From the NCBI GenBank assembly GCA_009103225.1, contig RHPI01000773.1, forward strand, positions 148,003 through 212,002: a DNA stretch of 64,000 bases, written 5' to 3'. The notes below the pieces were generated by a model, which worked only from the letters and a program-made list of their open reading frames with translations, had not been told where the DNA came from and did not search any database. Source of the stretch: Chlorokybus atmophyticus. Lineage: Eukaryota > Plantae > Mesostigma and Chlorokybus algae. The position numbers and the translations under genes were made by a program. Of this stretch, positions 45,387 to 57,887 are shown in pieces. Positions within the stretch are counted from its first letter, which is position 1, and every line of letters starts with the position of its first letter.

Positions 45387-47406
45387 ATGCAAGTCTCTGG
45401 GGACGGGATGTACGTGGCGTCGTCCATGGCGGAAGCAATGGCCTTAGCACAGCAGCAGGCGGACGCACTCCTACCGCTGGTTGTCCAGCACCACCACCAG
45501 GCCAATGAGCAGGGTGGAGGTGGTGGCATGGTCAATGGCATTATGGGCTGCGGGGATGGTGTCGTTGGAGGCAGGAATGCCACCTCAATTGGCATGAATT
45601 CTCACATTCATCGACACCCACACCATCAACGTTTACAAGAACAACACCAACAACCACACCAACACCAGCAGCATCAACAACAGCATCACCACCAACATCC
45701 ACATCATTATCAGCAGCAACACCATCAACAGCAACACGAACAGCAGCATGAGCAAAGGAGCAAGCGGAAGGTGAGGCATGTGGCGCTTGAGATGGACGCC
45801 GCCGCTCACCACAAGTTGATGAAGGTGGTGGCGGAGAAGCACGACGGCTCACTGGAACGCTTTATGGCGGATGCTCTCCAGCATGTTGATCAGTCAGGCG
45901 AAGGAGCTGTACCGTCTCACCTTCACCAACATCACCATCATCCACTTTCTGCTCCTCTGGCTGCTCGTCCTGACAGTGCTTCTTCGCTGTTGCATGATCG
46001 TGAAGCCAACGCTGCACCAGCCTCATCCTCTGCGCCTCCTCCTGAACCCAAGCAGCGCAAGACCAACCAGAAGAAGCCGGCTCTCACCAAATGGAAGCGC
46101 ATCAAGTGAGTTGGTGTGTACGCATGTGTTTAAAGAGTGTCAGCAGCCTTACGTACCAGTTCAACATACAGTTTGCATGAGCAAACCAGTGACAGCGTTC
46201 TGAGCAGTGGAACTGTTAGTGTTGATATAGCAGAAGTGTAGCAGCTTCCACACAGCATGCACTCAAGTCTGTGCCACTGACCATAGCATGCCTACTCTGT
46301 AGGTGGTTTCAAAGCTTGTGTACAACAATGCAGCCAGCATACTTGTTCACTGGCTGCTTGCTTGCATTTGACTGTTTCACATTCCCTGAGCTTACAGCTT
46401 ACAGCTTATGTCTGAATGGCCTCTTCTCATCAACCACCTTCCTGTCGCCTTCTTGTCAAGCTGGCAGCTGACAAGAAGGCAGACAAAAGTGGAAGCTCCA
46501 ACTCACATGTTTATATGTATATGTGTGTGGCGCAGATTCGAGCAGCTGCGTGGGACGGACATGGAGGAGTTGGCGGCAGCGTACAGAGCGCTGGCACGGC
46601 AGGTGCAATCGCAGCAGCAACAGCAGCTGCCACAGCAGCAGTCTCTGCCTGTGTCGGGGAACCTTGCTAGCGTGGCGTGGGAGCAGCTGACCATCCCGCA
46701 GCTGGAGCACATGTTGGAGGAGGTGAAGCGTTTCCTCGGCGTGTTGGAGAGGACACATGACTGTGATGTGGACGGCTGCGGCCGACGCTTCGGCACGCCC
46801 GGAGCGCTGCGCGATCACGCCAACGAGCACACGGGCGAGAGGCCGTACGCGTGCCAACATGAAGGCTGCGGCGAGAACTTCGCCTCAAAAGCACTCCTCT
46901 GCCGACACGTCAAGAAGCACGAGCGCGCTCACATGTGCATGCATCCGGGCTGCAACAAGCGCTTCGCCTTCCGCGAACGATTGCAGGTGTGGGTTTTGGC
47001 AAACAACCCAACATTCTGCTTATATGCCCCTCATGTACGCAATCCAACATTGTGCCCATATGCCTTCCTGCAGTAGTAGCTTCTGCTTGCCAACAGTGGG
47101 GCCACATCTGCACAGGTGCACCAACGCACTCATTGCGATCAAAGGCCTCTCGTGTGTCCATGGGAGGGTTGTGGAAAGACCTTCAAGTGGGCCAACAGTC
47201 TTCACGGCCACTTGCGTACGCACACCGGAGAGAAGCCTTTCCAGTGCAATTTCCAGAACTGCGGTCGATTGTTTGGGTACAAAGTGGACCTCACTCGCCA
47301 CATGCGCACGCATTTTGGCCAACCCGCGAGGGCCACGCCGTCAACCTCCTCATCCGCGCATCACCACCAGACAATGCAGAGCCAGCAGCAACATCAACAA
47401 CAATAA
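45387..47406 (+). CDS. C2H2 zinc-finger transcription factor with five CX4C fingers and Q/H-rich N-terminus (exons about 45387-46106, 46536-46986, 47116-47406)
   Basis: Fingers CDVDGC..H..H, CQHEGC, CMHPGC, CPWEGC and CNFQNC with TGERPY/TGEKPF linkers. The phase-2 splice joins KWKRIK to FEQLRG. The start codon is uncertain. Confidence 0.85.
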
Positions 47407-48481
47407 CAGCAAGGCTCGCAGCTCCCTCAACACCCGCAGCATGCATTGTCTGTGGTGAGCCCCTGATTATTTTCATGCCTCATGACCCCGCGCGCTAGTA
47501 GTCCTCCTCAGCGTTTCCCTGTGTAAAAAGCACCTTCCCCATCGTTCAATAATGGGTTGCGTATAGCTGTGCACCCACCCCCAACATTCATGTTGTCTCT
47601 GTGTATAGCATTAGTGGCAGATTCAGGCGACGATGTACATTCAGTTGCGTTGTGAACTTGTACCAAAACCGCGATACTAGCGTAGTGGTATTTATGTAGT
47701 TAGCTTGTATGTAATGTTAAGGCTACAGCCTGCAGGCTTGTCTATGTGTCATGTGAATCTGGCGTCTGGCTGTGCGTTGCGTATGCGAAGTGACTATGTA
47801 TAAAGTTACGCCGCGGTTCCTGCCAGCAGCACCACCGTTGCAACTGCTCTATTTGTCTGGGTATGGTGGGTGTCCGCTCCCTCTGGACATGTAAGCTTTG
47901 GTTATGATTGTGCCCGCCATTACGAAGTTAGATGTGCGCATACGCTGATGTGCGGGTGGGCATGTGTACTTGCCAGTTCGTTGTATGTTGGTATCAACTG
48001 CATGCCCGGTAGCCAGATTGTGTTGAGCTAACAAGTATGATACAGCCTCTATGTGGTGTGCGCATGGGCGTGCTGATCACAGCAAGCCATGGCGTCTTTG
48101 CAAGGTGCTTCGAGCCGTGCAGAGCGACACTTTGCAGTGCAGTATATAGATAGCAACACTGATTGTCACCGACAACGCCAACTACATGTGACCTCTATCA
48201 TACTACTATACAACCTACTGCGTTACAGTGGTAGGCTGGAAGCCGGCTGCCAAAAAGGGCGGGAGCATGTGTGTGATTATGGGCGGCACGTGTAAGCCAC
48301 CACGTGTTGGTTTGCATGGAGGATGTCCTCCCATGTTGTACCCTGCCACCACGCAGACGCGTCCCAGGCAAAAGAATCATCTACGTATAATGTACTCGCC
48401 CTACTACTGATGTTATGTAAAACTGGAAGGTGTGCAAACTGTCGACATGTCATGTCATGCGCGAGGACACACATAACCACA

Positions 48482-51400
48482 TCAATCCTGCCACGCCCAC
48501 GGCCCACGCGAGGGTTCTTCCCAGTCGCTTCCGCTGCTGTAGCGTTCCAAGCTGGGACCGGCCGAGGGACCGGACCCGCGCGGGGTGCGTGGGGCGAACC
48601 CGTCGCTTGAGTGGCTCTGTCGGGGAGACACCATGCCGGGTTGTTGCGTTGGGTACCCGTACGCGTCCACACCAACGCACCCGCCACCCCCGCCACCCAA
48701 CAAATCCAAGTGAGCACACGCCTGCTGAGCCGCCTGCCGCAGACGCACACGCGCACCCAACGCGGTCACGCCCAACGCGCGAAGGTTGTCGTCGCTCATT
48801 GTCGCAAGCAAGTCCACAGATACATCCTCCTGTACACACACACATGCGCGCGCGCGCGCGCCCACACACATGTGAGCCTCCAGTTGAGACTAGACTTGCA
48901 TACAAAAGGCAGGCACACGCAAAGGCGTGCCAACTTACCCGTGCGAGTGCGTCAAAATGTTGTTCGAGTCCCGCTTGTTGCAGGACGTGCTGCAGATCCG
49001 CGAGCCAGTGCGGGTTGGCCATGTCGTGGTGACGTGGGGCGAGAAGCGATAACGATGCACTATTGGCCGCGGACCGCGGGGATCCTCCCTGCGTGCACAG
49101 CATGGACACGTCAACAACTCAGAGCACATTACCACAACACAACACAACACAGGCTGAATTCACATGTGCATTCTAATTCATGTTGTACAACAGCACACAC
49201 GTATGCCCGCACACGCACGCGCACGCGCACGCGCACGCGCACACGCCCACACCCACACCCACGCCCACGCGCACATACCTGAACAACTCCATAGTGTTGC
49301 CCTTGTGCACGCAACGACAGCCTCCTCTGCCGCACGTAAGGGCTGCCGCTGCCGTCGTCCGAGTGGTTCGGGCTCGGCGTGCCGCTGAACGAACGCTGAA
49401 CGAGCGCCGCACCCGGCTGGACCCCAACCCAACCCACTTGGACACCCGCCTGCATGTCGCGCGCTGCTGCACCCGCCTTTTGAGGTGACAGGACGTAACG
49501 CCCTGTGTGTGTATGTGTTACGACACATGGAACATGCTCAAGGCCAAGTAGACACGCACACACGCACAGACACACACGCACGCGCACGCACACCCACACG
49601 TACATTCGGGCACACGCACATGCACACGCTCACGCTCACGTACACACGCGCGCGCACGCACGCACGCACGCACACACTCTCTCTAAAGCCAAACGTATGT
49701 GTTCTGTACCTGGCGAGCTTGATCTGCTGCTCACACTCGTGCGTGCGCTTCCTGCCAGTTGCTGCGTTGGCTGCCCCGCAGACAGGTGTCTTCGATGCTG
49801 ATGCTGCTGCTGCTGCTGCGGGTACTGCTGGCCACTACCGTTCTGCTGTGCTGTTGGTAATGTGTGCATGTGCCGTTGAGCGGATTCCATCGCGCGCATG
49901 TCGTCGGGGATCATCAAGGCAGAGCCCGCGTCCATGTGACGGTAGTCCTCGTGCATGCGCGGTGCAACCCTCTGTAACACACAACCGCGCACACGCACAC
50001 GCGCACACACACACACACACTGTCAGCCTGACCCAACTGCACCAAATGATTTTGAGCGTATACGCGTCGATTGGTTTCTTTACCGGTGAAGGCGAGTCCA
50101 ACGCACGCTCAAGGTCCTCTTGCATTTGCGCCACTCTCGCAAGCATCTGCACAGTCAAATATGTGTGCGTGCGTGCGTGTGTATGTATGTGTGCAACATC
50201 ACAAAGTCCAAAGCAACATGTGTGTGTGCAACATGTGTGCCTACGTTCGGGTGCATGTGGTCCGCCTCAGGTCGCGCTGCGTTTGTCGGGCTTCGTGACG
50301 TGTGCGCACCCAACATCTCCACGGGGTGTGACCGCCTCGGTGGCGACACGGACCCACCGTTGTTGTTGTGTTGATGTTGGTGTTGTTGTTGTTGGTGGTG
50401 TGCATTGTAAGACGACGCATCATCGAGATGCATCTCAGGCACGTTGCCCCCCTTTTGAATAAACATCCGCTGCATAGACTGTAGCACAAGTGAGTAGTAT
50501 GTTGGGTTGGTCGTCGTAGAGTGGGTTTGTTGCATAATGTGTACGTACTTGTGGTGAGGGTGGGCTTCGGAAGCCCGGACTGCTTCTGTTGGAACCCGAG
50601 TCGTGCGAGTGAGAACGATGCTCGGCTTGTTGGGAAATCGCCACAGTGAGAGAAGAACGCTGCGAGGAAGGGAGCCATGTTGGGTTATGTGGTGTTGTGT
50701 TCTTTGATGCGAGCAAGGGTGGGCGCACTGTATATATGGGCAAAGATGTGTGTCTGCGCGCACGTGTGTGCGTATATGTCTGCACATGAGCGCACATGTC
50801 TGTGCGTACGCGCACGCGCGCACGTGTGTATGCATGTGTACGCATGTGTGTGTGTGTGTGCGCGCGCGCGCATGTGTATGTGTATGCAAGGATGCACACA
50901 CAAAAACGCACGCGTGTGTGCGCACACTCGCATACACGTGTATGTGTGCGTGTTCTCACCTTCTTCTGCGCTTCAGGAGAGCGACTGCCATACTCCATAG
51001 ACGATCGTTCCTTGCGTTGTACATACTTCTGCTCAAACTGTGACGAGGTGGTCCCATCCCCAACTTGGTTGTTGCTCTCGCCGTTAGCAAGACCGCTTAA
51101 CGCTTGCGTGGGGCTCCCAACAGGACTCCTCAACTGCTTTGAGGACACACGATACACTCAATCACCACATGAGCTTTGTTGAGTCGTGTTGTTGGGTTGT
51201 TGGGTTGGGTTGGGTTGTGGTGCAAACACACGTACCGGCTGTGGTGGTGGTGACGCCGTTGTGGTTGATGCTGATGTTGGGTTGTCGGTTTGAGTTGTGT
51301 CTTCTGTGCTGGCAGGCTTTGCACGTGCTTGACTCGATGAGGCGGCGATCGAGCTCGGCGTGATGAGCTCGCATTGAAGACCCACAGTGGCCTGTGTTGG

Positions 51401-54400
51401 GTAAGTATTGGTGACTCTTTACACAGGGTGTTGTTGTGTCGCACACACAAGCCCACACTGCAACAACTAACCTTTTCGATGGGCGTTGTTGTTGTTGTAT
51501 CTCGCGCTGCAAGCGCTGCCATCGCCTGTGCCTGCAACGACATTGATCAAAGTTATTGATACTATGTTATTGTTGTTGTTGTTGTTGTTGTAAACAGTGC
51601 TAGTGTTACCTTGTGCAAGGCTTCTTCCCAGAGTCCGCTTTTGTGCAGGAACGTCCGCATGATGCCCTTGCCCTTGATCTTACGCGCTCCGCAAAGCACA
51701 AAGTCATCGGGGTAGCTGTGACGGAGAGTTGCATGTAAGTTACATGAACAAGGGACAGATCTTGCAAAGAATTTTAAGCTTACAAATATGCATATGTACG
51801 TCACTCACACCCGCGCACATGCACACCCACACGAGTATGCATTCACGCCGTGCACGTGCACACACGCACACATGTGTCGACGTGTCTCGCGCTTACAGGT
51901 ATATGAGCCGCTCGTATGTCTGATCGCTGCAGTGGACCGCCATCGGGAAGCCGTTGCTCTCCATGCGACTGTCGAGCCACCCAACACATATCAACATGCG
52001 GACCACGCCACGCATCCCACACGTGTACTTGACTCGCGGTTGTTACTTTTTGCAACACTCTCTTGACAGTTGCATCAACCAACACGTGACATGCCTGGCG
52101 GTGTTGACGGTGTCGCCGAAAAAGCAGTATCGCGGACACTTGGCGCCGATCACGCCCGCATAAGCAGGACCAGAATGCATGCCAACGCGAATCTGGTGGG
52201 AGACAGCATGGTTTCAGTTCCCAACGTGTGTCTCTGTGTGTGTGTGTGCGTGCACACGTGTGCGTGTGTTCTTTTGCATGCGTGCGTGCACGCACATGTG
52301 CCTGCGCGCGTGTGCGTGAGTTCTTCTGAGTAAATGTGCATGCACGTGCACGTGCGTGCGTGCACCTGTGTGCACGTATGCATGTCTGCGTGCGTGATGT
52401 GCGTGGGTGCGTGTGCATGTGCGTGCGTGCGTGCGTGCGTGCGTGTATGTGTGTACGTGTACCTGAACCGGTGGCATTCCCGCCGGTAGGATCAGTTTCG
52501 ACACCGCCTCGATCATGTCGAGCGCAAGATTGAGTACTCTTTCCGCGTGGTTGGCTGCGGAGCACTCCTCGTGCCCCGCAACCGCCATGTACGCGTCCCC
52601 GATCGTCTCCACCTTGTACACGCCGTGCTTGTCCACCAGACCGTCGAACGCAGTGAACATCTCGTTCAACATGTGGATCACGGACATCGTTGGCGTGGAT
52701 GAAGCAATCCTGGGAGAACAACGATCACTGATGACATACAGCCCAACATACGCACATGCACACAACTATACACGTGCGTTTGTACAGATGTTGCGAGTAA
52801 GGCACATGTGTACTCAGTGTAACATGTTTACACAATCACAAGTGTTGAAGCCAAGCACAGCAACATGTTGCTGTGCTTGGCTTCAGGTTAAGGTCCAGCC
52901 ACGAGCACATAATCAATGATGTTGTTTGACAGGAATGTGTGTGCGTTGTGCGCGAGTGTACTTGGCGCGCATGCACAGAGGAGATGTGTTGCACTGTTGT
53001 TGCGACAGTCTTTGCACACAAACTCACGTTGTGAAGCCGACGATGTCTGTGAATAGCACCGTGACGTCCTCGTGCGAGTCGCTGATCATGGTCTGCCCCG
53101 ACTGCAGGCGCGTGATGATGGGCATGGGCAGCATCTTCTGAAGCAGCTGCACGTGACGCGCCGCCTCAACCTGCGGGGTGGGATGTTGGTGGTGAGTAGG
53201 TGGTTATGTGGGACTTGATGCAGTATACACACATGCAGACGCACACACTCACGTGCTGCTTGCACGCACTGCTTACACACACATGCGTGCGCACACGTGC
53301 ATGTGCGTGATGGCATATGCACGTACGCACACGCGCGCGCACGCGCACGCATACGCACCTGTGCGTGTGCATGCACACACGAACGCACATACTTGAGCAA
53401 ACACGCACACTATATTGCGATTGTGTTGTATCATCACACCTCGATGCGCCATGCGTCTTTCAGTTTGAGCTGCGTCTGTATGCGCGCGAGCATCTCCGTC
53501 CTGTTGAACGGTTTGGTGACGTAATCATTGGAGCCGGCCTTGAGACCCTCCACGATGTTCTTCTCCTGGGACTTGGCAGAGATCATGATGATGGGGATGT
53601 TGGCCGAAGGGTACAGCTTGCGGATCTGCTCGCAAACCTCGTAACCGGACATCTGCACACAGACACAAAGTCCACGCCATCAGTAAAGTGGCATGGTATG
53701 GAAATACTTGTGAAGGCTAATGTGGGACTAGTTGGAGTTGAGGCATGACGCGTGTGCTTGGTGATGACACACAGATGCACACGCACACCCATGACCACAC
53801 GCACACGCGCACGCGCGCGCATAAACCCCCCCACACCACTCACCTTTGGCATCATAACATCCAGCAGTATCAAGTCCGGGAAGCTCGTCGCTTTGCTTAT
53901 ATACTCCAGCGCCTGTATCCCATCCATCGCCTGGGTCACCTTACACTTGAGCGGTTGCAGTAGTGACTCGATCACCATCTGGTTGATGGCGTCGTCATCC
54001 ACTGAGAGTATCTCCACGACGCCGTGAGACTCTTTGTGTGTCCTTCTAGCAGCAACAAGCTCAGAGGCGGTGCTAATGGCTGCAGTGAGAGGGAGGAGAG
54101 GCTCGTTGGTGGACACGCCGTCACGGGTTGTACTCGACACGGCGGGTCCACTTGGGATAGATGCAATGGTTGCTTTGGTGAGGTTGTTGTTGGCTGCGGT
54201 GAGGGCGGGTCCACCCGAGGTGGGTGGCTCTTTGGGGCTAGTTGGGTCCCTTGTTGTTGTGCCTGTGCCTCCCGCTGTTGTTGTTGCTCCTGTTGTTGTT
54301 GTGTTGGTCTCCTGTGGGCTGTGCGGGTGCGGGGCGTGAGAGGACTCCTTCGAGGGTGACTCGGGAAGAGTTATTAGCTGAGGGGGACCGTGGTGAGACT

Positions 54401-57400
54401 TTCTCGAAACGGACCGAGCGGGGGCAAAGGGCTTGGGTGTGGGTGCAGCAGCGGTGCCCTGCAAGAAGAGTGTGTGAGTGCGTCTGGGCATGCGTACGTC
54501 CGTGCTCATGTGTACATGCGTGCTCATTTGTGCGTATGTGTGCACCGATATGCATTCACACACGCGCGCACGCGCCCACGCGTACATACGCACACGTGTG
54601 TTAGTGTGTGTATGTGCCTGCGAATGCGCGCGCGCACGCGTGTGTGTGTGCGTGTGCGCGTGCGCGTGCGCGTGCGTGTGTGTCCCTGTGTGTAGATGCG
54701 TGTGCATGTGTACGTGCGTGCATTTGCGTGTGGGTGTGGGTGCGAGTCCACGCGCAAACGTGCCAGTGTCCATGTTGAGGGAAAGCATGATACATGCTTC
54801 AATCTCTCTATAAACAACATAACAGTAACTCACCTGCGGTCTCTCAAACGGCAGCGTGACGGCGAATGTTGTGCCCTGTCCGAACGTGGAGTTGACTGTG
54901 ACGGTGCCGCGGTGCGCGAGGACGAGCTGCTTGACGAGGCTGAGGCCGAGACCCGTCCCGCCGTACTTCTTACCCGTCGAGGCGTCCGCCTGCTGGAACG
55001 CCTCGAAGATCACATTGATCTTGTCCTCGGGGATGCCGATGCCCGTGTCCGTCACACTGACAAAGACAAAGGTAAAGGTAAGCACACACTTGTGTACACG
55101 CACCTGCGAGCGGGTGCAGGCCCACACGCAACGTGCGCGAGCGTGCGCATGCGCACATGCACAACCACAACCACAACCACACATGTACCTGATGGCTATG
55201 GCAGTGCCATTCTGTATTAGGTCCGCCGACACTGTGATGGAACCTGCAGCACGGGCGATACATTGTTGTAGACATCGTACAACATGTCTTGCCAACACAC
55301 ACACGCACAGCATGTTGTAGAGCAAAGCTCTCACCTTGGTGGGTGAACTTTGAAGCGTTGCCCAACAAGTTGAACAGTATCTGCAGTATACGACCGGTGT
55401 CACCCAGAAAAGGCGGTAAGGACTCCGGCACTTTGCTGATAAGCTGAATCAAAACAACCCCACATAAGTGAATTGCACACACGAATCCACACGCTGTCGT
55501 CGACACGACGTGCACATGTGCAGGATGATTACCTGCACATCCTTGGCGACGAGGATTTTGGTCAACTGGAAGGCGTCGTCAACAAGCTGCTTCAGCATCA
55601 CCGGCTCTTGCTTAATGTAGAGAGCGTTCTCGTGCAGGGAGGCGTTGTCAAGGATATCTGTTGCAAAGGTTTTCAGCATGGAGATATAACCAAAGAGTAA
55701 CTTACATCAACAGTTGTGGTAAGTGTTTGTTGCAAATGGGAATCGTTACAGTAGTATATGTGTGCTTACCACACACGAGAGCCATGAGTCGGACACCGCT
55801 GATCTTGATAGTGTGCAGAGTCTTGTGCAAGTTGTCTGGCACAGCTCCACATGACCCCTGCAAAGCAATAACAGTCACATACAATTGTTGCATGCCACAT
55901 ACACACATGCGCACCCACACACGCACACATACCTCGAGTGCGCTCTCAGACAATCCAATAATCCCATTGAGTGGCGTGCGCAGGTCATGGCTTATAGTTG
56001 CTAGGAACTTGTCCTTCTTATTTAGCTCATTCTCCAGCTCTTTGATGAGTTGCACGCGCTTGCCCTCTTCCATGTCCATAAAAGCATTTAACCGTCTCTG
56101 CTCTGAGGTGAGAAAGTTGCCTCTCAATAATGAGGACGTGAAGGCCACTTTGGAGAAGAAGTCGCAGAATGTGTACGCGCTCTCTTCTACTGTGGGTGTC
56201 ATAAGGTGCAATGCCGCAGCCACCCATATGATGGGGAATGCCGACCACGCCGCCACGGTGTATATCTTCAAGTACTCCATGTTGGTTGTGAGCTTGCGTT
56301 TCCCGCCAGGAGCGTGAGACGACGAACCCAGCATGTGCCACATGGCGTAGCTCACGTGGCAGAAACACAACATGGAGATGCATAGGGAGATGGCTCCCCA
56401 TGGTGCCCACTCGCACCACGAGGCGGTAAAACCCGTGACGATCATGATCACGTTGGTGATGTACGTGGCGAGCTTGCGGTTGGCGGAGTAGTCCGACACG
56501 AGTCCACACAAGAACAACATTGCCACGGTAGAGTGTCCCCACGCCACGAAACGTTGTGGGTATAATCTCCTCCCTCTCACATCAGATAAAACCGGAGCCG
56601 CCCCGGGAAAAGCCGCGAGTAGGAAATTAAAACACGCGGTGAGGTTGATGAAACACACGATACAATCGAGACTCATTCTCCCCGGGTCCCAATCGAAAGC
56701 CATGGTGAGGATATTGATGACAAGTTGTGTACCAAATGCCATCACGGGCCACAATTGAGCCTGCTCGGCCTCGCCGAAACGAGACACGTCGGATGATGCG
56801 AACACAACCGAGGAAATGTATGTCACGGTGAAGTAGGAGACCGAAGCAAACACGACAAACTTCAAGTTGCCAATCAGCTGCATCTGACCGGAATCCATGT
56901 AAGCAGGCACCCTCATCTTCCCACCCTGCAGAATCAACAACAACAACAACACATCACAGTCAGCGTTCTCACACACGCGAGCACAACAGTTCTGCACTCC
57001 CCTCCCCTCCCCGCAACAACAACAACTTCAGTCATTGTATATTAATGCTGTTTTACGCAATGGCGACGATAAGAAAACAAATATTGTTTCTGTGCTGCCC
57101 TACCCTTGATGCAATGCTTTGTATGCCACCCTTGCTGAACACAAGCAGAGTGTGTTGACAATTCAACGTAGGTGTCCTACTCTTGCCTGCTGCGGAGCAT
57201 AACACAGCCAACAATAGTATGCAACAGTGTACAATGTAAGGTCTCTGACACTGGCAACGGGAGCTCCTATTGAGTCACACTGATTACTTATCCAACGATG
57301 AAAAGTATGTGCGTTGTCACAAGCTGTTTTAGGTGGCCAACCAGCATAGCTTTAACTCAAATGCTGTCCCATGCCATTACATGAATTGGAAGCCAGCTCA

Positions 57401-57887
57401 CAGCCACAAGCATTGCTGACGGAGTTGAACTGCGAGCGAGGACACTATGTACCAGCCCACTCCTCATTCAGAGTGTGTTGTTTGACCAAGGGATCCACAC
57501 TTTGCTTCTGGGCTGCGCAAGCTTTATATTGCTATTCTCAATCAATGTGCATGATATAGCTTGTGCAAAACAGCAAGGTCAAACTGCGCTTCTAGCACAA
57601 CTTCTGCTGATGACCAAAATGGCAGTTGACTGCGATCAGTCAGTGAGTAGGCTGGCTGAAAATGTATGCTTGATACGGAAGATCAGACGATTAGGGTGAG
57701 AAAGCCCTGGCTGGAAGCGGGTCAGCTTGGACCTACTACCAGATCAGACCAGCCGGACCAGACCACTAACCTTCAACCGTGGGCTCCCAGTGGCATCGTC
57801 TCCGCCGCCGCTGTGTGTGGCCAGCACATTGCTGTGCTCGCTGCTGCGGCGGCGCCTCAGGTTCGCCGCCATGGCCTGATCCCCCAT
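48482..57887 (-). CDS. Histidine-kinase rhodopsin / 2c-Cyclop-type protein: 8-TM microbial rhodopsin - HisKA/HATPase - receiver - guanylyl cyclase - low-complexity tail - SAM; about 24 exons
   Basis: Traced exons include 57887-57771, 56925-55933, 55857-55770, 55657-55533, 55443-55335, 55243-55189, 55056-54834, 54458-53844, 53652-53440, 53170-53028, 52709-52463, 52192-52095, 51968-51897 and 51715-51610. Motifs: DFFSKVAF (retinal Lys), [81 protein letters not shown], and SAM-like [41 protein letters not shown]. Confidence 0.93.

What the first reader, a model, noticed from the sequence alone, without database searches (positions are those of the whole stretch)
48482..57887. Complete light-to-cGMP phosphorelay in one polypeptide (rhodopsin-HK-REC-GC-SAM)
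Seen: eight hydrophobic segments, retinal Lys, phospho-His, all HATPase boxes, receiver Asp/Lys, both cyclase metal Asp residues, and the guanylyl-specific E (KVETIGD) and C (RYCFFG). Established: Chlamydomonas and Volvox 2c-Cyclop proteins have this core and are ATP-dependent, light-inhibited guanylyl cyclases. Inference: a new, apparently intact family member and optogenetic candidate that is easily mis-annotated because it is split over about 24 exons.
Basis: partly seen in the sequence, partly recalled or inferred. Interest (0 to 1): 0.75.

Follow-up and report, generated by a model that had tools for sequence, protein, structure and literature searches.

The report
Algal light-sensor fused to cGMP-making enzyme
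This Chlorokybus gene encodes one intact, expressed protein joining a rhodopsin light sensor, a histidine-kinase relay, a guanylyl cyclase and a SAM domain, but it belongs to a known family and is already in the public annotation.

Summary
On the minus strand, 57887 to 48482, 24 coding exons give one open frame of 4986 nt (1661 aa). The order is 8-helix rhodopsin, HisKA/HATPase kinase, receiver, class III cyclase, long low-complexity linker, SAM.

One 5313-nt spliced contig of a public run matches without mismatch. It joins exons 8-24 exactly, and its length and word share fit exons 2-7.

It is not new. The public Chlorokybus model jgi/Chlat1 Chrsp38S05552 (1622 aa) is 99.75% identical. A 2023 survey lists "ChlatRh HKR" with motifs that occur in this protein. 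The same architecture with SAM occurs in predicted proteins of Mesostigma, Klebsormidium, Myrmecia and Chlamydomonas eustigma.

What is added here:
- A GC-AG intron that the public model misreads, putting 3 extra residues into the cyclase catalytic loop.
- Ala at the BR-D85 position.
- A tree position with the Mesostigma proteins, outside both characterised clades (Cop5, Cop6).

The function, light-regulated and ATP-dependent cGMP synthesis, is inferred. The sign and colour of the light effect are open. The scan noted this same stretch once more (s1-183851), not on other DNA.

The parts
48482..57887 (-). Coding span of the gene: 24 exons, 4986 nt, 1661 aa, stop at 48484-48482. The transcript contig runs on about 317 nt past 48470 (3' UTR).
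   Evidence: Frame check; spliced contig; public model P0280 99.75% identical over 1622 aa
57771..57887 (-). Exon 1 (aa 1-39), predicted N-terminal cytosolic stretch. Uncertain: the public model starts at Met43 (56916-56914).
   Evidence: In-frame ATG, stop 16 codons upstream with no ATG between, GT donor. The contig holds 115 nt upstream of exon 2, which fits exon 1 but also fits retained intron.
55933..56925 (-). Exon 2 (aa 40-370): 8-helix rhodopsin (TM0 plus 7 TM) running straight into the DHp helix with the H-box.
   Evidence: Pfam Bac_rhodopsin 3.5e-21 and HisKA 7.4e-9 in one ORF; AF2 pLDDT 91.6; Foldseek top hits 7d7q/7cj3 Rh-PDE
56149..56151 (-). Lys298, retinal Schiff-base lysine (BR K216). 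Asp294 (BR D212) lies at 56161-56163.
   Evidence: Alignment to sensory rhodopsin II and other solved rhodopsins; family alignment K in 46/48
56542..56544 (-). Ala167 at the BR Asp85 (helix C counterion) position. Arg164 (BR R82) is kept.
   Evidence: RFVAW against RYxDW. In 48 HKR-type sequences this column is Q11 M10 E6 T5 C4 S4 and others; Ala only here.
55987..55989 (-). His352, phospho-accepting His of the H-box ([11 protein letters not shown]).
   Evidence: Pfam HisKA; H, E/D, L, P nearly invariant in the family alignment
54834..55857 (-). Exons 3-7 (aa 371-570): rest of HisKA and HATPase_c with N box (N470), G1 (D499), F box and G2 (GGTGLGL).
   Evidence: Pfam HATPase_c; collinear tblastn to four homologues; all GT-AG. 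Junctions predicted; they agree with P0280.
53440..54458 (-). Exons 8-9 (aa 571-846): 165-aa T/A/P/S-rich linker, then the receiver domain (D724/D725, D770 at 53859-53861, S800, K822).
   Evidence: Pfam Response_reg profile 1-54 and 55-111 on the two exons; junction shown by the contig
51610..53170 (-). Exons 10-14 (aa 847-1068): helical linker and class III guanylyl cyclase domain. Residues: D888 (53045-53047), E928 (52607-52609), D932, R997, C999 (52124-52126), N1006, R1010, K1047.
   Evidence: Best solved sequence matches are guanylyl cyclases: 6sir, 6ao9, ANP receptor, GC-C, 3et6. Alignment with Cop6, Cop5 and others. All junctions shown by the contig.
51969..52094 (-). Intron 12, GC-AG. 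The transcript form gives GDTVNTASRMES. The public model uses a GT donor 9 nt further on and reads [13 protein letters not shown].
   Evidence: Joint 51968/52095 with ends CT..GC; shifts tested; difference to P0280 located
49279..51531 (-). Exons 15-22 (aa 1069-1496): S/A/Q/P-rich, probably disordered linker between cyclase and SAM.
   Evidence: All junctions from the contig; composition; no Pfam match
48482..49088 (-). Exons 23-24 (aa 1497-1661): SAM domain split over the two exons, then a Gly/Pro-rich tail and the stop.
   Evidence: SAM_1 31.1 bits on P0280; half-domain 21.5-22.4 bits on exon 24 alone; alignment to SAM of the Mesostigma, Klebsormidium, Myrmecia and C. eustigma proteins

Best explanation
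This is the Chlorokybus member of the histidine-kinase rhodopsin (HKR, two-component cyclase opsin) family, an intact and expressed 1661-aa membrane protein.

Most likely mechanism:
- The 8-helix rhodopsin binds retinal at Lys298 and passes its light state through the directly continuous DHp helix to the kinase.
- The kinase autophosphorylates His352 with ATP and passes the phosphoryl group to Asp770 of the receiver in the same protein (in a dimer, possibly in trans).
- The phosphorylated receiver switches on the homodimeric class III cyclase through the helical linker, and cGMP is made from GTP.
- The C-terminal SAM domain, on a 477-aa flexible linker, probably serves self-association or docking.

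Shown: gene structure, splicing, open frame, domains and catalytic residues. Inferred from Cr2c-Cyclop1 and Vc2c-Cyclop1: the phosphorelay logic and ATP dependence. Open: whether light inhibits or activates, and at which wavelength.
For: - One spliced 5313-nt contig (0 mismatches) covers exons 8-24 and the 3' UTR. Its 1708 nt upstream of exon 8 fit the 1710 nt of predicted exons 1-7.
- Run X1 holds 0.46 of the sampled words of 51500-57499. The expectation is 0.452 if exons 2-15 are all present and 0.215 if only exons 8-15 are.
- The frame is open over 1661 codons.
- All six Pfam domains pass their cut-offs on the public model of the same gene.
- The cyclase exons match solved guanylyl cyclases best. 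Glu928 aligns with the specificity Glu of the rhodopsin-guanylyl cyclases (6sir, 6ao9), which is Lys in entry 5oyh. Cys999 aligns with the Cys of RYCLFGD in GC-A, GC-C and CYG12.
- In the alignment with Cop6, the active Cr2c-Cyclop1 (activity per PMC6284317), every metal, base, ribose and transition-state residue is the same. Cop5, reported inactive and degenerate (PMC8006352), differs.
- The rhodopsin model is confident and 8-helical, nearest to the enzyme rhodopsin Rh-PDE.
Against: - No biochemical data exist for this protein or any streptophyte HKR in the papers searched.
- The rhodopsin is only 29% identical to Cop6 and lies outside the Cop6 clade.
- The helix-C counterion is Ala, a residue not seen in 47 relatives, so chromophore behaviour may differ.
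- Cop5 shows that this architecture can lack cyclase activity.
- Exon 1 and the junctions of exons 1-7 rest on prediction, arithmetic and the public model, not on laid reads.
- Run X1 is labelled RNA only by guess. Its RNA origin is inferred from the 16 introns cleanly removed between exons 8 and 24.
Confidence: 0.75

Rival explanations
1. Same protein, but a bistable photochromic switch like Cop5/HKR1 rather than a green, light-inhibited enzyme like Cop6. A UV-A-absorbing state with an unprotonated Schiff base and a blue-absorbing state would interconvert, turning an intact cyclase on and off. That would be a natural counterpart of the engineered switch-Cyclop1.
For: - Highest rhodopsin identity is to the Cop5-type clade: 40% to C. 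eustigma g4227 and 36% to the C. incerta Cop5 orthologue, against 29% to Cop6.
- The pocket has a non-carboxylate residue at the D85 position plus Asp at D212, as in Cop5 (M/D). Cop6-type proteins have Q/N.
- The Cop5 opsin can drive the Cop6 kinase-receiver-cyclase part (PMC8006352).
Against: - The tree does not place it in the Cop5 clade (96/87 support without it). It goes with Mesostigma at 92/82.
- Ala is not Met, and no spectroscopy exists.
- Similarity of two pocket residues does not predict bistability.
Confidence: 0.2
2. The cyclase works mainly as a partner in heterodimers, for example with a second Chlorokybus HKR whose cyclase looks dead. Alternatively the kinase signals to other receivers, so the protein alone is not a self-contained light-to-cGMP relay.
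For: - An unchecked scan note (s1-186436) reports another HKR with a degenerate cyclase in this genome.
- Mesostigma has one paralogue with an intact rhodopsin, a degenerate cyclase and SAM, and one with an intact cyclase but no retinal Lys in my alignment.
- Heterodimer function was proposed for Cop5 (PMC8006352).
- SAM domains mediate association.
Against: One chain here carries all residues that a homodimeric class III cyclase needs, and its own kinase and receiver are intact. Nothing requires a partner.
Confidence: 0.12
3. It is an adenylyl cyclase or a catalytically silent relic.
For: Pfam PF00211 covers both cyclase types. Several HKRs (Cop5, C. eustigma g4227, Mesostigma Mv16792) have degenerate cyclases.
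Against: - The Glu928/Arg997/Cys999 triad is the guanylyl type; adenylyl cyclases have Lys/Gln/Asp (established knowledge of class III cyclases).
- The best solved matches are guanylyl cyclases.
- Both metal Asp, Asn1006, Arg1010 and Lys1047 are present.
- The frame is open and the gene is transcribed.
Confidence: 0.05

Closest known systems
Cr2c-Cyclop1 (Cop6) and Vc2c-Cyclop1, two-component cyclase opsins (PMC6284317)
   Same: - Order of parts: 8-TM opsin, histidine kinase, receiver, guanylyl cyclase.
- All cyclase catalytic and GTP-specifying residues are identical to Cop6.
- H-box His and receiver Asp are present.
- Many small exons.
   Different: - The rhodopsin is only about 29% identical and lies outside the well-supported Cop6 clade.
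- Pocket A167/D294 here against Q/N in Cop6-type proteins.
- 1661 aa against 2549 and 2210 aa.
- Kinase-receiver insert of 165 aa against about 500 aa.
- Activity not measured.
Cop5 / HKR1 of Chlamydomonas reinhardtii (Cre02.g074150; P0166)
   Same: Same domain order. Non-carboxylate residue at BR-D85 with Asp at BR-D212. The rhodopsin is more similar to this clade (36-40%) than to Cop6.
   Different: - The Cop5 cyclase lacks metal, base and transition-state residues and shows no activity (PMC8006352). Here all are present.
- Met in Cop5 against Ala here at the D85 position.
- Not inside the Cop5 clade.
Mesostigma viride HKRs Mv16792 (P0004) and Mv16781 (P0016), and Klebsormidium nitens KFL_004210020 (P0204)
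   Same: - Streptophyte-alga proteins of the same architecture.
- The Mesostigma pair is the nearest group in the rhodopsin tree (92/82).
- The REC-GC part of the public Chlorokybus model is 62% identical to Mv16781.
- SAM aligns with Mv16792 and Klebsormidium.
   Different: Mv16792 has a degenerate cyclase. Mv16781 has Gln in place of the retinal Lys in my alignment. The Chlorokybus protein has both halves intact. None of these is characterised.
Fungal rhodopsin-guanylyl cyclases (BeGC1/CaRhGC; PDB 6sir, 6ao9)
   Same: Best solved sequence match of the cyclase core exon. Same Glu/Cys specificity pair. Described in the literature as 8-TM enzyme rhodopsins (PMC8006352).
   Different: There the rhodopsin is fused directly to the cyclase, without kinase or receiver. 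They are light-activated (PMC8006352).

Membership tests
Histidine-kinase rhodopsins (HKR) | Microbial-type rhodopsin with the retinal lysine on helix G | tested here: met
   Pfam Bac_rhodopsin. K298 aligns with the Schiff-base Lys of solved rhodopsins, shown residue by residue for sensory rhodopsin II and in the family alignment.
Histidine-kinase rhodopsins (HKR) | Rhodopsin followed in the same polypeptide by HisKA (H-box His) and HATPase_c (N, G1, F, G2 boxes) | tested here: met
   Rhodopsin and H-box lie in one exon; HATPase_c 100 bits on P0280; motifs located.
Histidine-kinase rhodopsins (HKR) | Receiver domain with acidic pair, phospho-Asp, Ser/Thr and Lys | tested here: met
   Response_reg 100 bits; D724/D725, D770, S800, K822.
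Two-component cyclase opsins (2c-Cyclop) | Eight transmembrane helices (type Ib) with an extra N-terminal helix | tested here: met
   The AF2 model has TM0 plus 7 TM. The best solved match is the 8-TM Rh-PDE. The side of the membrane on which the N-terminus lies was not testable.
Two-component cyclase opsins (2c-Cyclop) | Class III cyclase domain with complete catalytic set and guanylyl-type Glu/Arg/Cys | tested here: met
Two-component cyclase opsins (2c-Cyclop) | One transcript and one open frame covering all domains | tested here: met
   Spliced contig and frame check. Exons 1-7 are supported by arithmetic and by the public model.
Two-component cyclase opsins (2c-Cyclop) | ATP-dependent guanylyl cyclase activity, inhibited by light, needing the His and the Asp | not testable with these tools
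   Needs expression and enzyme assay as in PMC6284317.
Two-component cyclase opsins (2c-Cyclop) | Orthology with the Cop6/Vop6 clade | tested here: not met
   In the rhodopsin/DHp tree the Cop6 clade has 98/97 support without the query. The query groups with Mesostigma at 92/82.

The most novel reading that the evidence does not exclude
The Chlorokybus protein is a natural bistable (UV-A/blue switchable) guanylyl cyclase: a Cop5-like photochromic rhodopsin with Ala at the counterion position, coupled to a fully competent kinase-receiver-cyclase chain. So far this combination exists only as the engineered chimera switch-Cyclop1. It would also show that a complete light-to-cGMP relay was present before chlorophytes and streptophytes split.
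Probability: 0.2. Interest if true: 0.55.

Novelty: new member of a known kind. Interest (0 to 1): 0.3.

Why it matters
Only two proteins of this family (Cop6, Vop6) have measured activity, and Cop5 is inactive. A compact (1661 aa), fully intact member from one of the earliest-branching streptophyte algae is a reasonable candidate for expression. It could show how the retinal pocket (Ala at BR-D85) sets the colour and sign of regulation, and it could serve as an optogenetic cGMP tool.

The practical gain here is the corrected coding sequence. The transcript uses a GC-AG intron, so the catalytic loop reads TVNTASRMES and not the public model's [13 protein letters not shown]. Anyone cloning from the public model would insert three residues between the catalytic Asn and Arg.

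The gene itself and its family are known, so it does not open a new question.

Tried and rejected
- Volvox origin. I first suspected Volvox from the CA/TG-rich introns and about 55% G+C, so that this might be Vc2c-Cyclop1 itself. Rejected: that gene spans 22.8 kb and encodes 2210 aa. The public model jgi/Chlat1 Chrsp38S05552 is 99.75% identical, which fixes the organism as Chlorokybus, as scan notes said.
- Representative search. The search of protein representatives with the exon-2 ORF gave at best 42% identity and did not return the public Chlorokybus model. That blank was misleading. The model appeared only when a Mesostigma relative's REC-GC region was used as query.
- 'Cop5-like' as a clade statement. 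Rejected by the tree and kept only as a similarity.
- The look-up of encoding contigs for P0280: nothing on record.
- Supplement of PMC10865886: not held, so ChlatRh is identified with this gene only through the motifs GKRKL and VSPR, each occurring once in the model.
- I spent it on 48470-54469, the least predictable part (cyclase to SAM).
- Joined model. It was built only inside the closed script machine, for the frame check, residue coordinates and a local comparison with P0280. It was never sent to a search or fold tool. Searches were made exon by exon by reference, or with P0280.
Full report
WHAT IS THERE

The region 48482-57887 holds one gene on the minus strand. Six-frame ORFs already show collinear pieces of a rhodopsin, a histidine kinase, a receiver, a class III cyclase and a SAM domain.

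Pfam on these pieces, given by reference, returns:
- Bac_rhodopsin (3.5e-21) and HisKA (7.4e-9) in the same ORF.
- HATPase_c (2.2e-21).
- Response_reg in two pieces.
- Guanylate_cyc in several pieces.
- SAM_1 (1.6e-4).

tblastn of four full-length relatives gives hits in the same order along the strand, including the C-terminal SAM.

GENE MODEL AND EXPRESSION

A public run (X1) holds 0.46 of the sampled words of 51500-57499. Laying its contigs on 48470-54469 shows one 5313-nt contig on the minus strand. It has no mismatch and no gap, and it skips 16 introns between 54458 and 48470. Thirteen skips come from joints or adjoining contig pieces, each ending GT..AG or GC..AG on the minus strand; three were placed from record numbering.

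After allowing the permitted shifts and solving the three junctions not listed from the record numbering, I obtain 24 coding exons:
- 57887-57771, 56925-55933, 55857-55770, 55657-55533, 55443-55335, 55243-55189, 55056-54834, 54458-53844
- 53652-53440, 53170-53028, 52709-52463, 52192-52095, 51968-51897, 51715-51610, 51531-51472, 51391-51236
- 51133-50960, 50659-50549, 50478-50245, 50146-50084, 49971-49710, 49502-49279, 49088-48939, 48829-48482

They give 4986 nt with no internal stop, that is 1661 aa. Twenty-two introns are GT-AG and one is GC-AG.

Exons 8-24 are read directly from the contig. Exons 1-7 are predicted from homology and splice signals. The support for them is indirect:
- The contig has 1708 nt upstream of exon 8, against 1710 nt from the ATG to the end of exon 7.
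- The expected share of wholly exonic 31-mers in 51500-57499 is 0.452 with exons 2-15 and 0.215 with exons 8-15 only. The observed share is 0.46.

The run is labelled RNA only by guess. A contig without 16 introns must derive from spliced RNA.

Exon 1 itself is not proven. The 115 nt upstream of exon 2 in the contig could be exon 1 or retained intron. In the second case translation would start at Met43 (56916). The domains are the same either way.

PUBLIC RECORD

A search with the REC-GC part of a Mesostigma relative returned P0280, 'jgi/Chlat1/5711/Chrsp38S05552', 1622 aa, with all six Pfam families. It is 99.75% identical to residues 43-1661 of my model. So the window is Chlorokybus, as earlier scan notes said, and the gene is already annotated.

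The only internal difference is at the exon 12/13 junction. The public model reads [13 protein letters not shown]. The transcript contig uses the GC donor at 52094 and gives TVNTASRMES, the canonical motif.

Pfam on P0280 gives:
- Guanylate_cyc 171 bits
- Response_reg 100 bits
- HATPase_c 100 bits
- Bac_rhodopsin 73 bits
- HisKA 50 bits
- SAM_1 31 bits

PMC10865886 (2023) lists 'ChlatRh HKR' of Chlorokybus atmophyticus CCAC 0220 with the motifs GKRKL and VSPR. Each occurs exactly once in this protein, at aa 247 and aa 1613. This is most likely the same gene. That paper gives no analysis of its cyclase.

RESIDUES

Rhodopsin. Alignment to solved rhodopsins puts Arg164, Ala167, Trp168, Ser171 and Thr172 at BR R82, D85, W86, T89 and T90. 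Asp294 and Lys298 fall at D212 and K216. The retinal Lys and one counterion are therefore present, and the helix-C counterion is absent.

This absence is usual in the family. Among 48 HKR-type sequences the D85 column is Q (11), M (10), E (6), T, C, S and others, and never Asp. Ala occurs only here. PMC7693036 reports the same variability, and also that Cop5 and Cop6 work without Asp85.

An AlphaFold2 model of exon 2, built with 47 relatives, has pLDDT 91.6. It shows an N-terminal helix (TM0), seven further helices, the B-C hairpin and a 57-residue helix carrying the H-box. Its best solved matches are the 8-TM Salpingoeca rhodopsin phosphodiesterase structures 7d7q and 7cj3.

Kinase and receiver:
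- Kinase: H352 (SHDLRTPLN), N470, D499 (DTGIGI), the F box and GGTGLGL.
- Receiver: D724/D725, D770 (LLDVMMP), S800, K822.

Cyclase. The two core exons match solved guanylyl cyclases best: the rhodopsin-guanylyl cyclases 6sir and 6ao9, ANP receptor, GC-C and Chlamydomonas CYG12 (3et6). Glu928 aligns with the specificity Glu, which is Lys in entry 5oyh. Cys999 aligns with the Cys of RYCLFGD.

In an exon-wise alignment with Cop6, Cop5, Klebsormidium, Mesostigma and others, the query shares D888, E928, D932, R997, C999, N1006, R1010 and K1047 with Cop6. Cop5, C. eustigma g4227 and Mesostigma Mv16792 are degenerate at these places.

SAM. The domain is split over exons 23 and 24. It aligns well with the SAM of the Mesostigma, Klebsormidium, Myrmecia and C. 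eustigma proteins.

RELATIVES

The exon-2 ORF finds 690 proteins. The best is 42% identical (C. eustigma GAX76781), followed by the C. incerta Cop5 orthologue and Mesostigma Mv16792. Several relatives have the same six-domain order including SAM. P0166 is Cop5 (CHLRE_02g074150) and P0250 is chlamyopsin-6.

A maximum-likelihood tree of the rhodopsin/DHp part (48 rows, 323 columns) places the query with the two Mesostigma proteins at 92/82. That branch is below the tool's threshold for strong support. The query lies outside the Cop5 clade (96/87) and the Cop6 clade (98/97). It is therefore a streptophyte-lineage HKR and not an orthologue of either characterised protein.

MECHANISM

By analogy with Cr2c-Cyclop1 (PMC6284317; review PMC12558739), the kinase phosphorylates the receiver with ATP, and the phosphorylated receiver activates the cyclase. 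Light acts on the kinase through the rhodopsin.

All parts needed for this are present and intact here. That is the best-supported reading, and I give it 0.75.

The direction and colour of the light effect cannot be read from the sequence. The pocket (A/D) resembles Cop5 (M/D) more than Cop6 (Q/N). A bistable UV-A/blue behaviour is therefore a real possibility, at about 0.2.

SURROUNDINGS

- Downstream, a C2H2 zinc-finger gene on the plus strand (about 46.4-47.4 kb) converges on the 3' end.
- Upstream, 58-64 kb is poorer in G+C and has no clear ORF.
- The plus strand of the gene region holds only low-complexity ORFs that arise from CA/TG-rich introns.

LIMITS

- The joined protein model was used only in local scripts and was not sent to any search or fold tool.
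- No experiment exists for this protein.

VERDICT

It is wrong as to novelty, and unproven as to Cop6-like behaviour.

Noticed in passing
window 51969-52094 (minus strand): GC-AG intron. The public Chlorokybus model (P0280) instead uses a GT donor 9 nt further on. That replaces Ser with Arg-His-Val-Thr between the catalytic Asn and Arg of the cyclase.
   Followed up: yes
window 46408-47406 (+): Multi-finger C2H2 zinc-finger gene, with motifs such as HTGERPYAC and HTGEKPFQC, converging on the 3' end of the rhodopsin gene.
   Followed up: no
P0016 (Mesostigma viride Mv16781), helix G: In my alignment this relative has Gln where the retinal Lys should be, yet its cyclase is intact. Its paralogue Mv16792 keeps the Lys but has a degenerate cyclase plus SAM. 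This division of labour could point to heterodimers, or it could be an alignment or gene-model artefact.
   Followed up: partly
window 56302-56316 (aa 247-251, GKRKL): The 'nuclear targeting signal' GKRKL that PMC10865886 assigns to ChlatRh lies in the short loop between the sixth and seventh of the eight modelled rhodopsin helices. That makes a role as a nuclear signal doubtful.
   Followed up: partly
window 48900-55200, introns: Most introns are rich in imperfect CA/TG (ACACGC-type) microsatellites. These create long spurious His/Thr/Arg/Cys-rich ORFs on both strands.
   Followed up: no
search tools: The exhaustive representative search with the rhodopsin exon did not return the public protein of this very gene (best hit 42%). 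The word-index search with a relative's REC-GC region did. A blank in the first search is not evidence that a protein is unannotated.
   Followed up: yes
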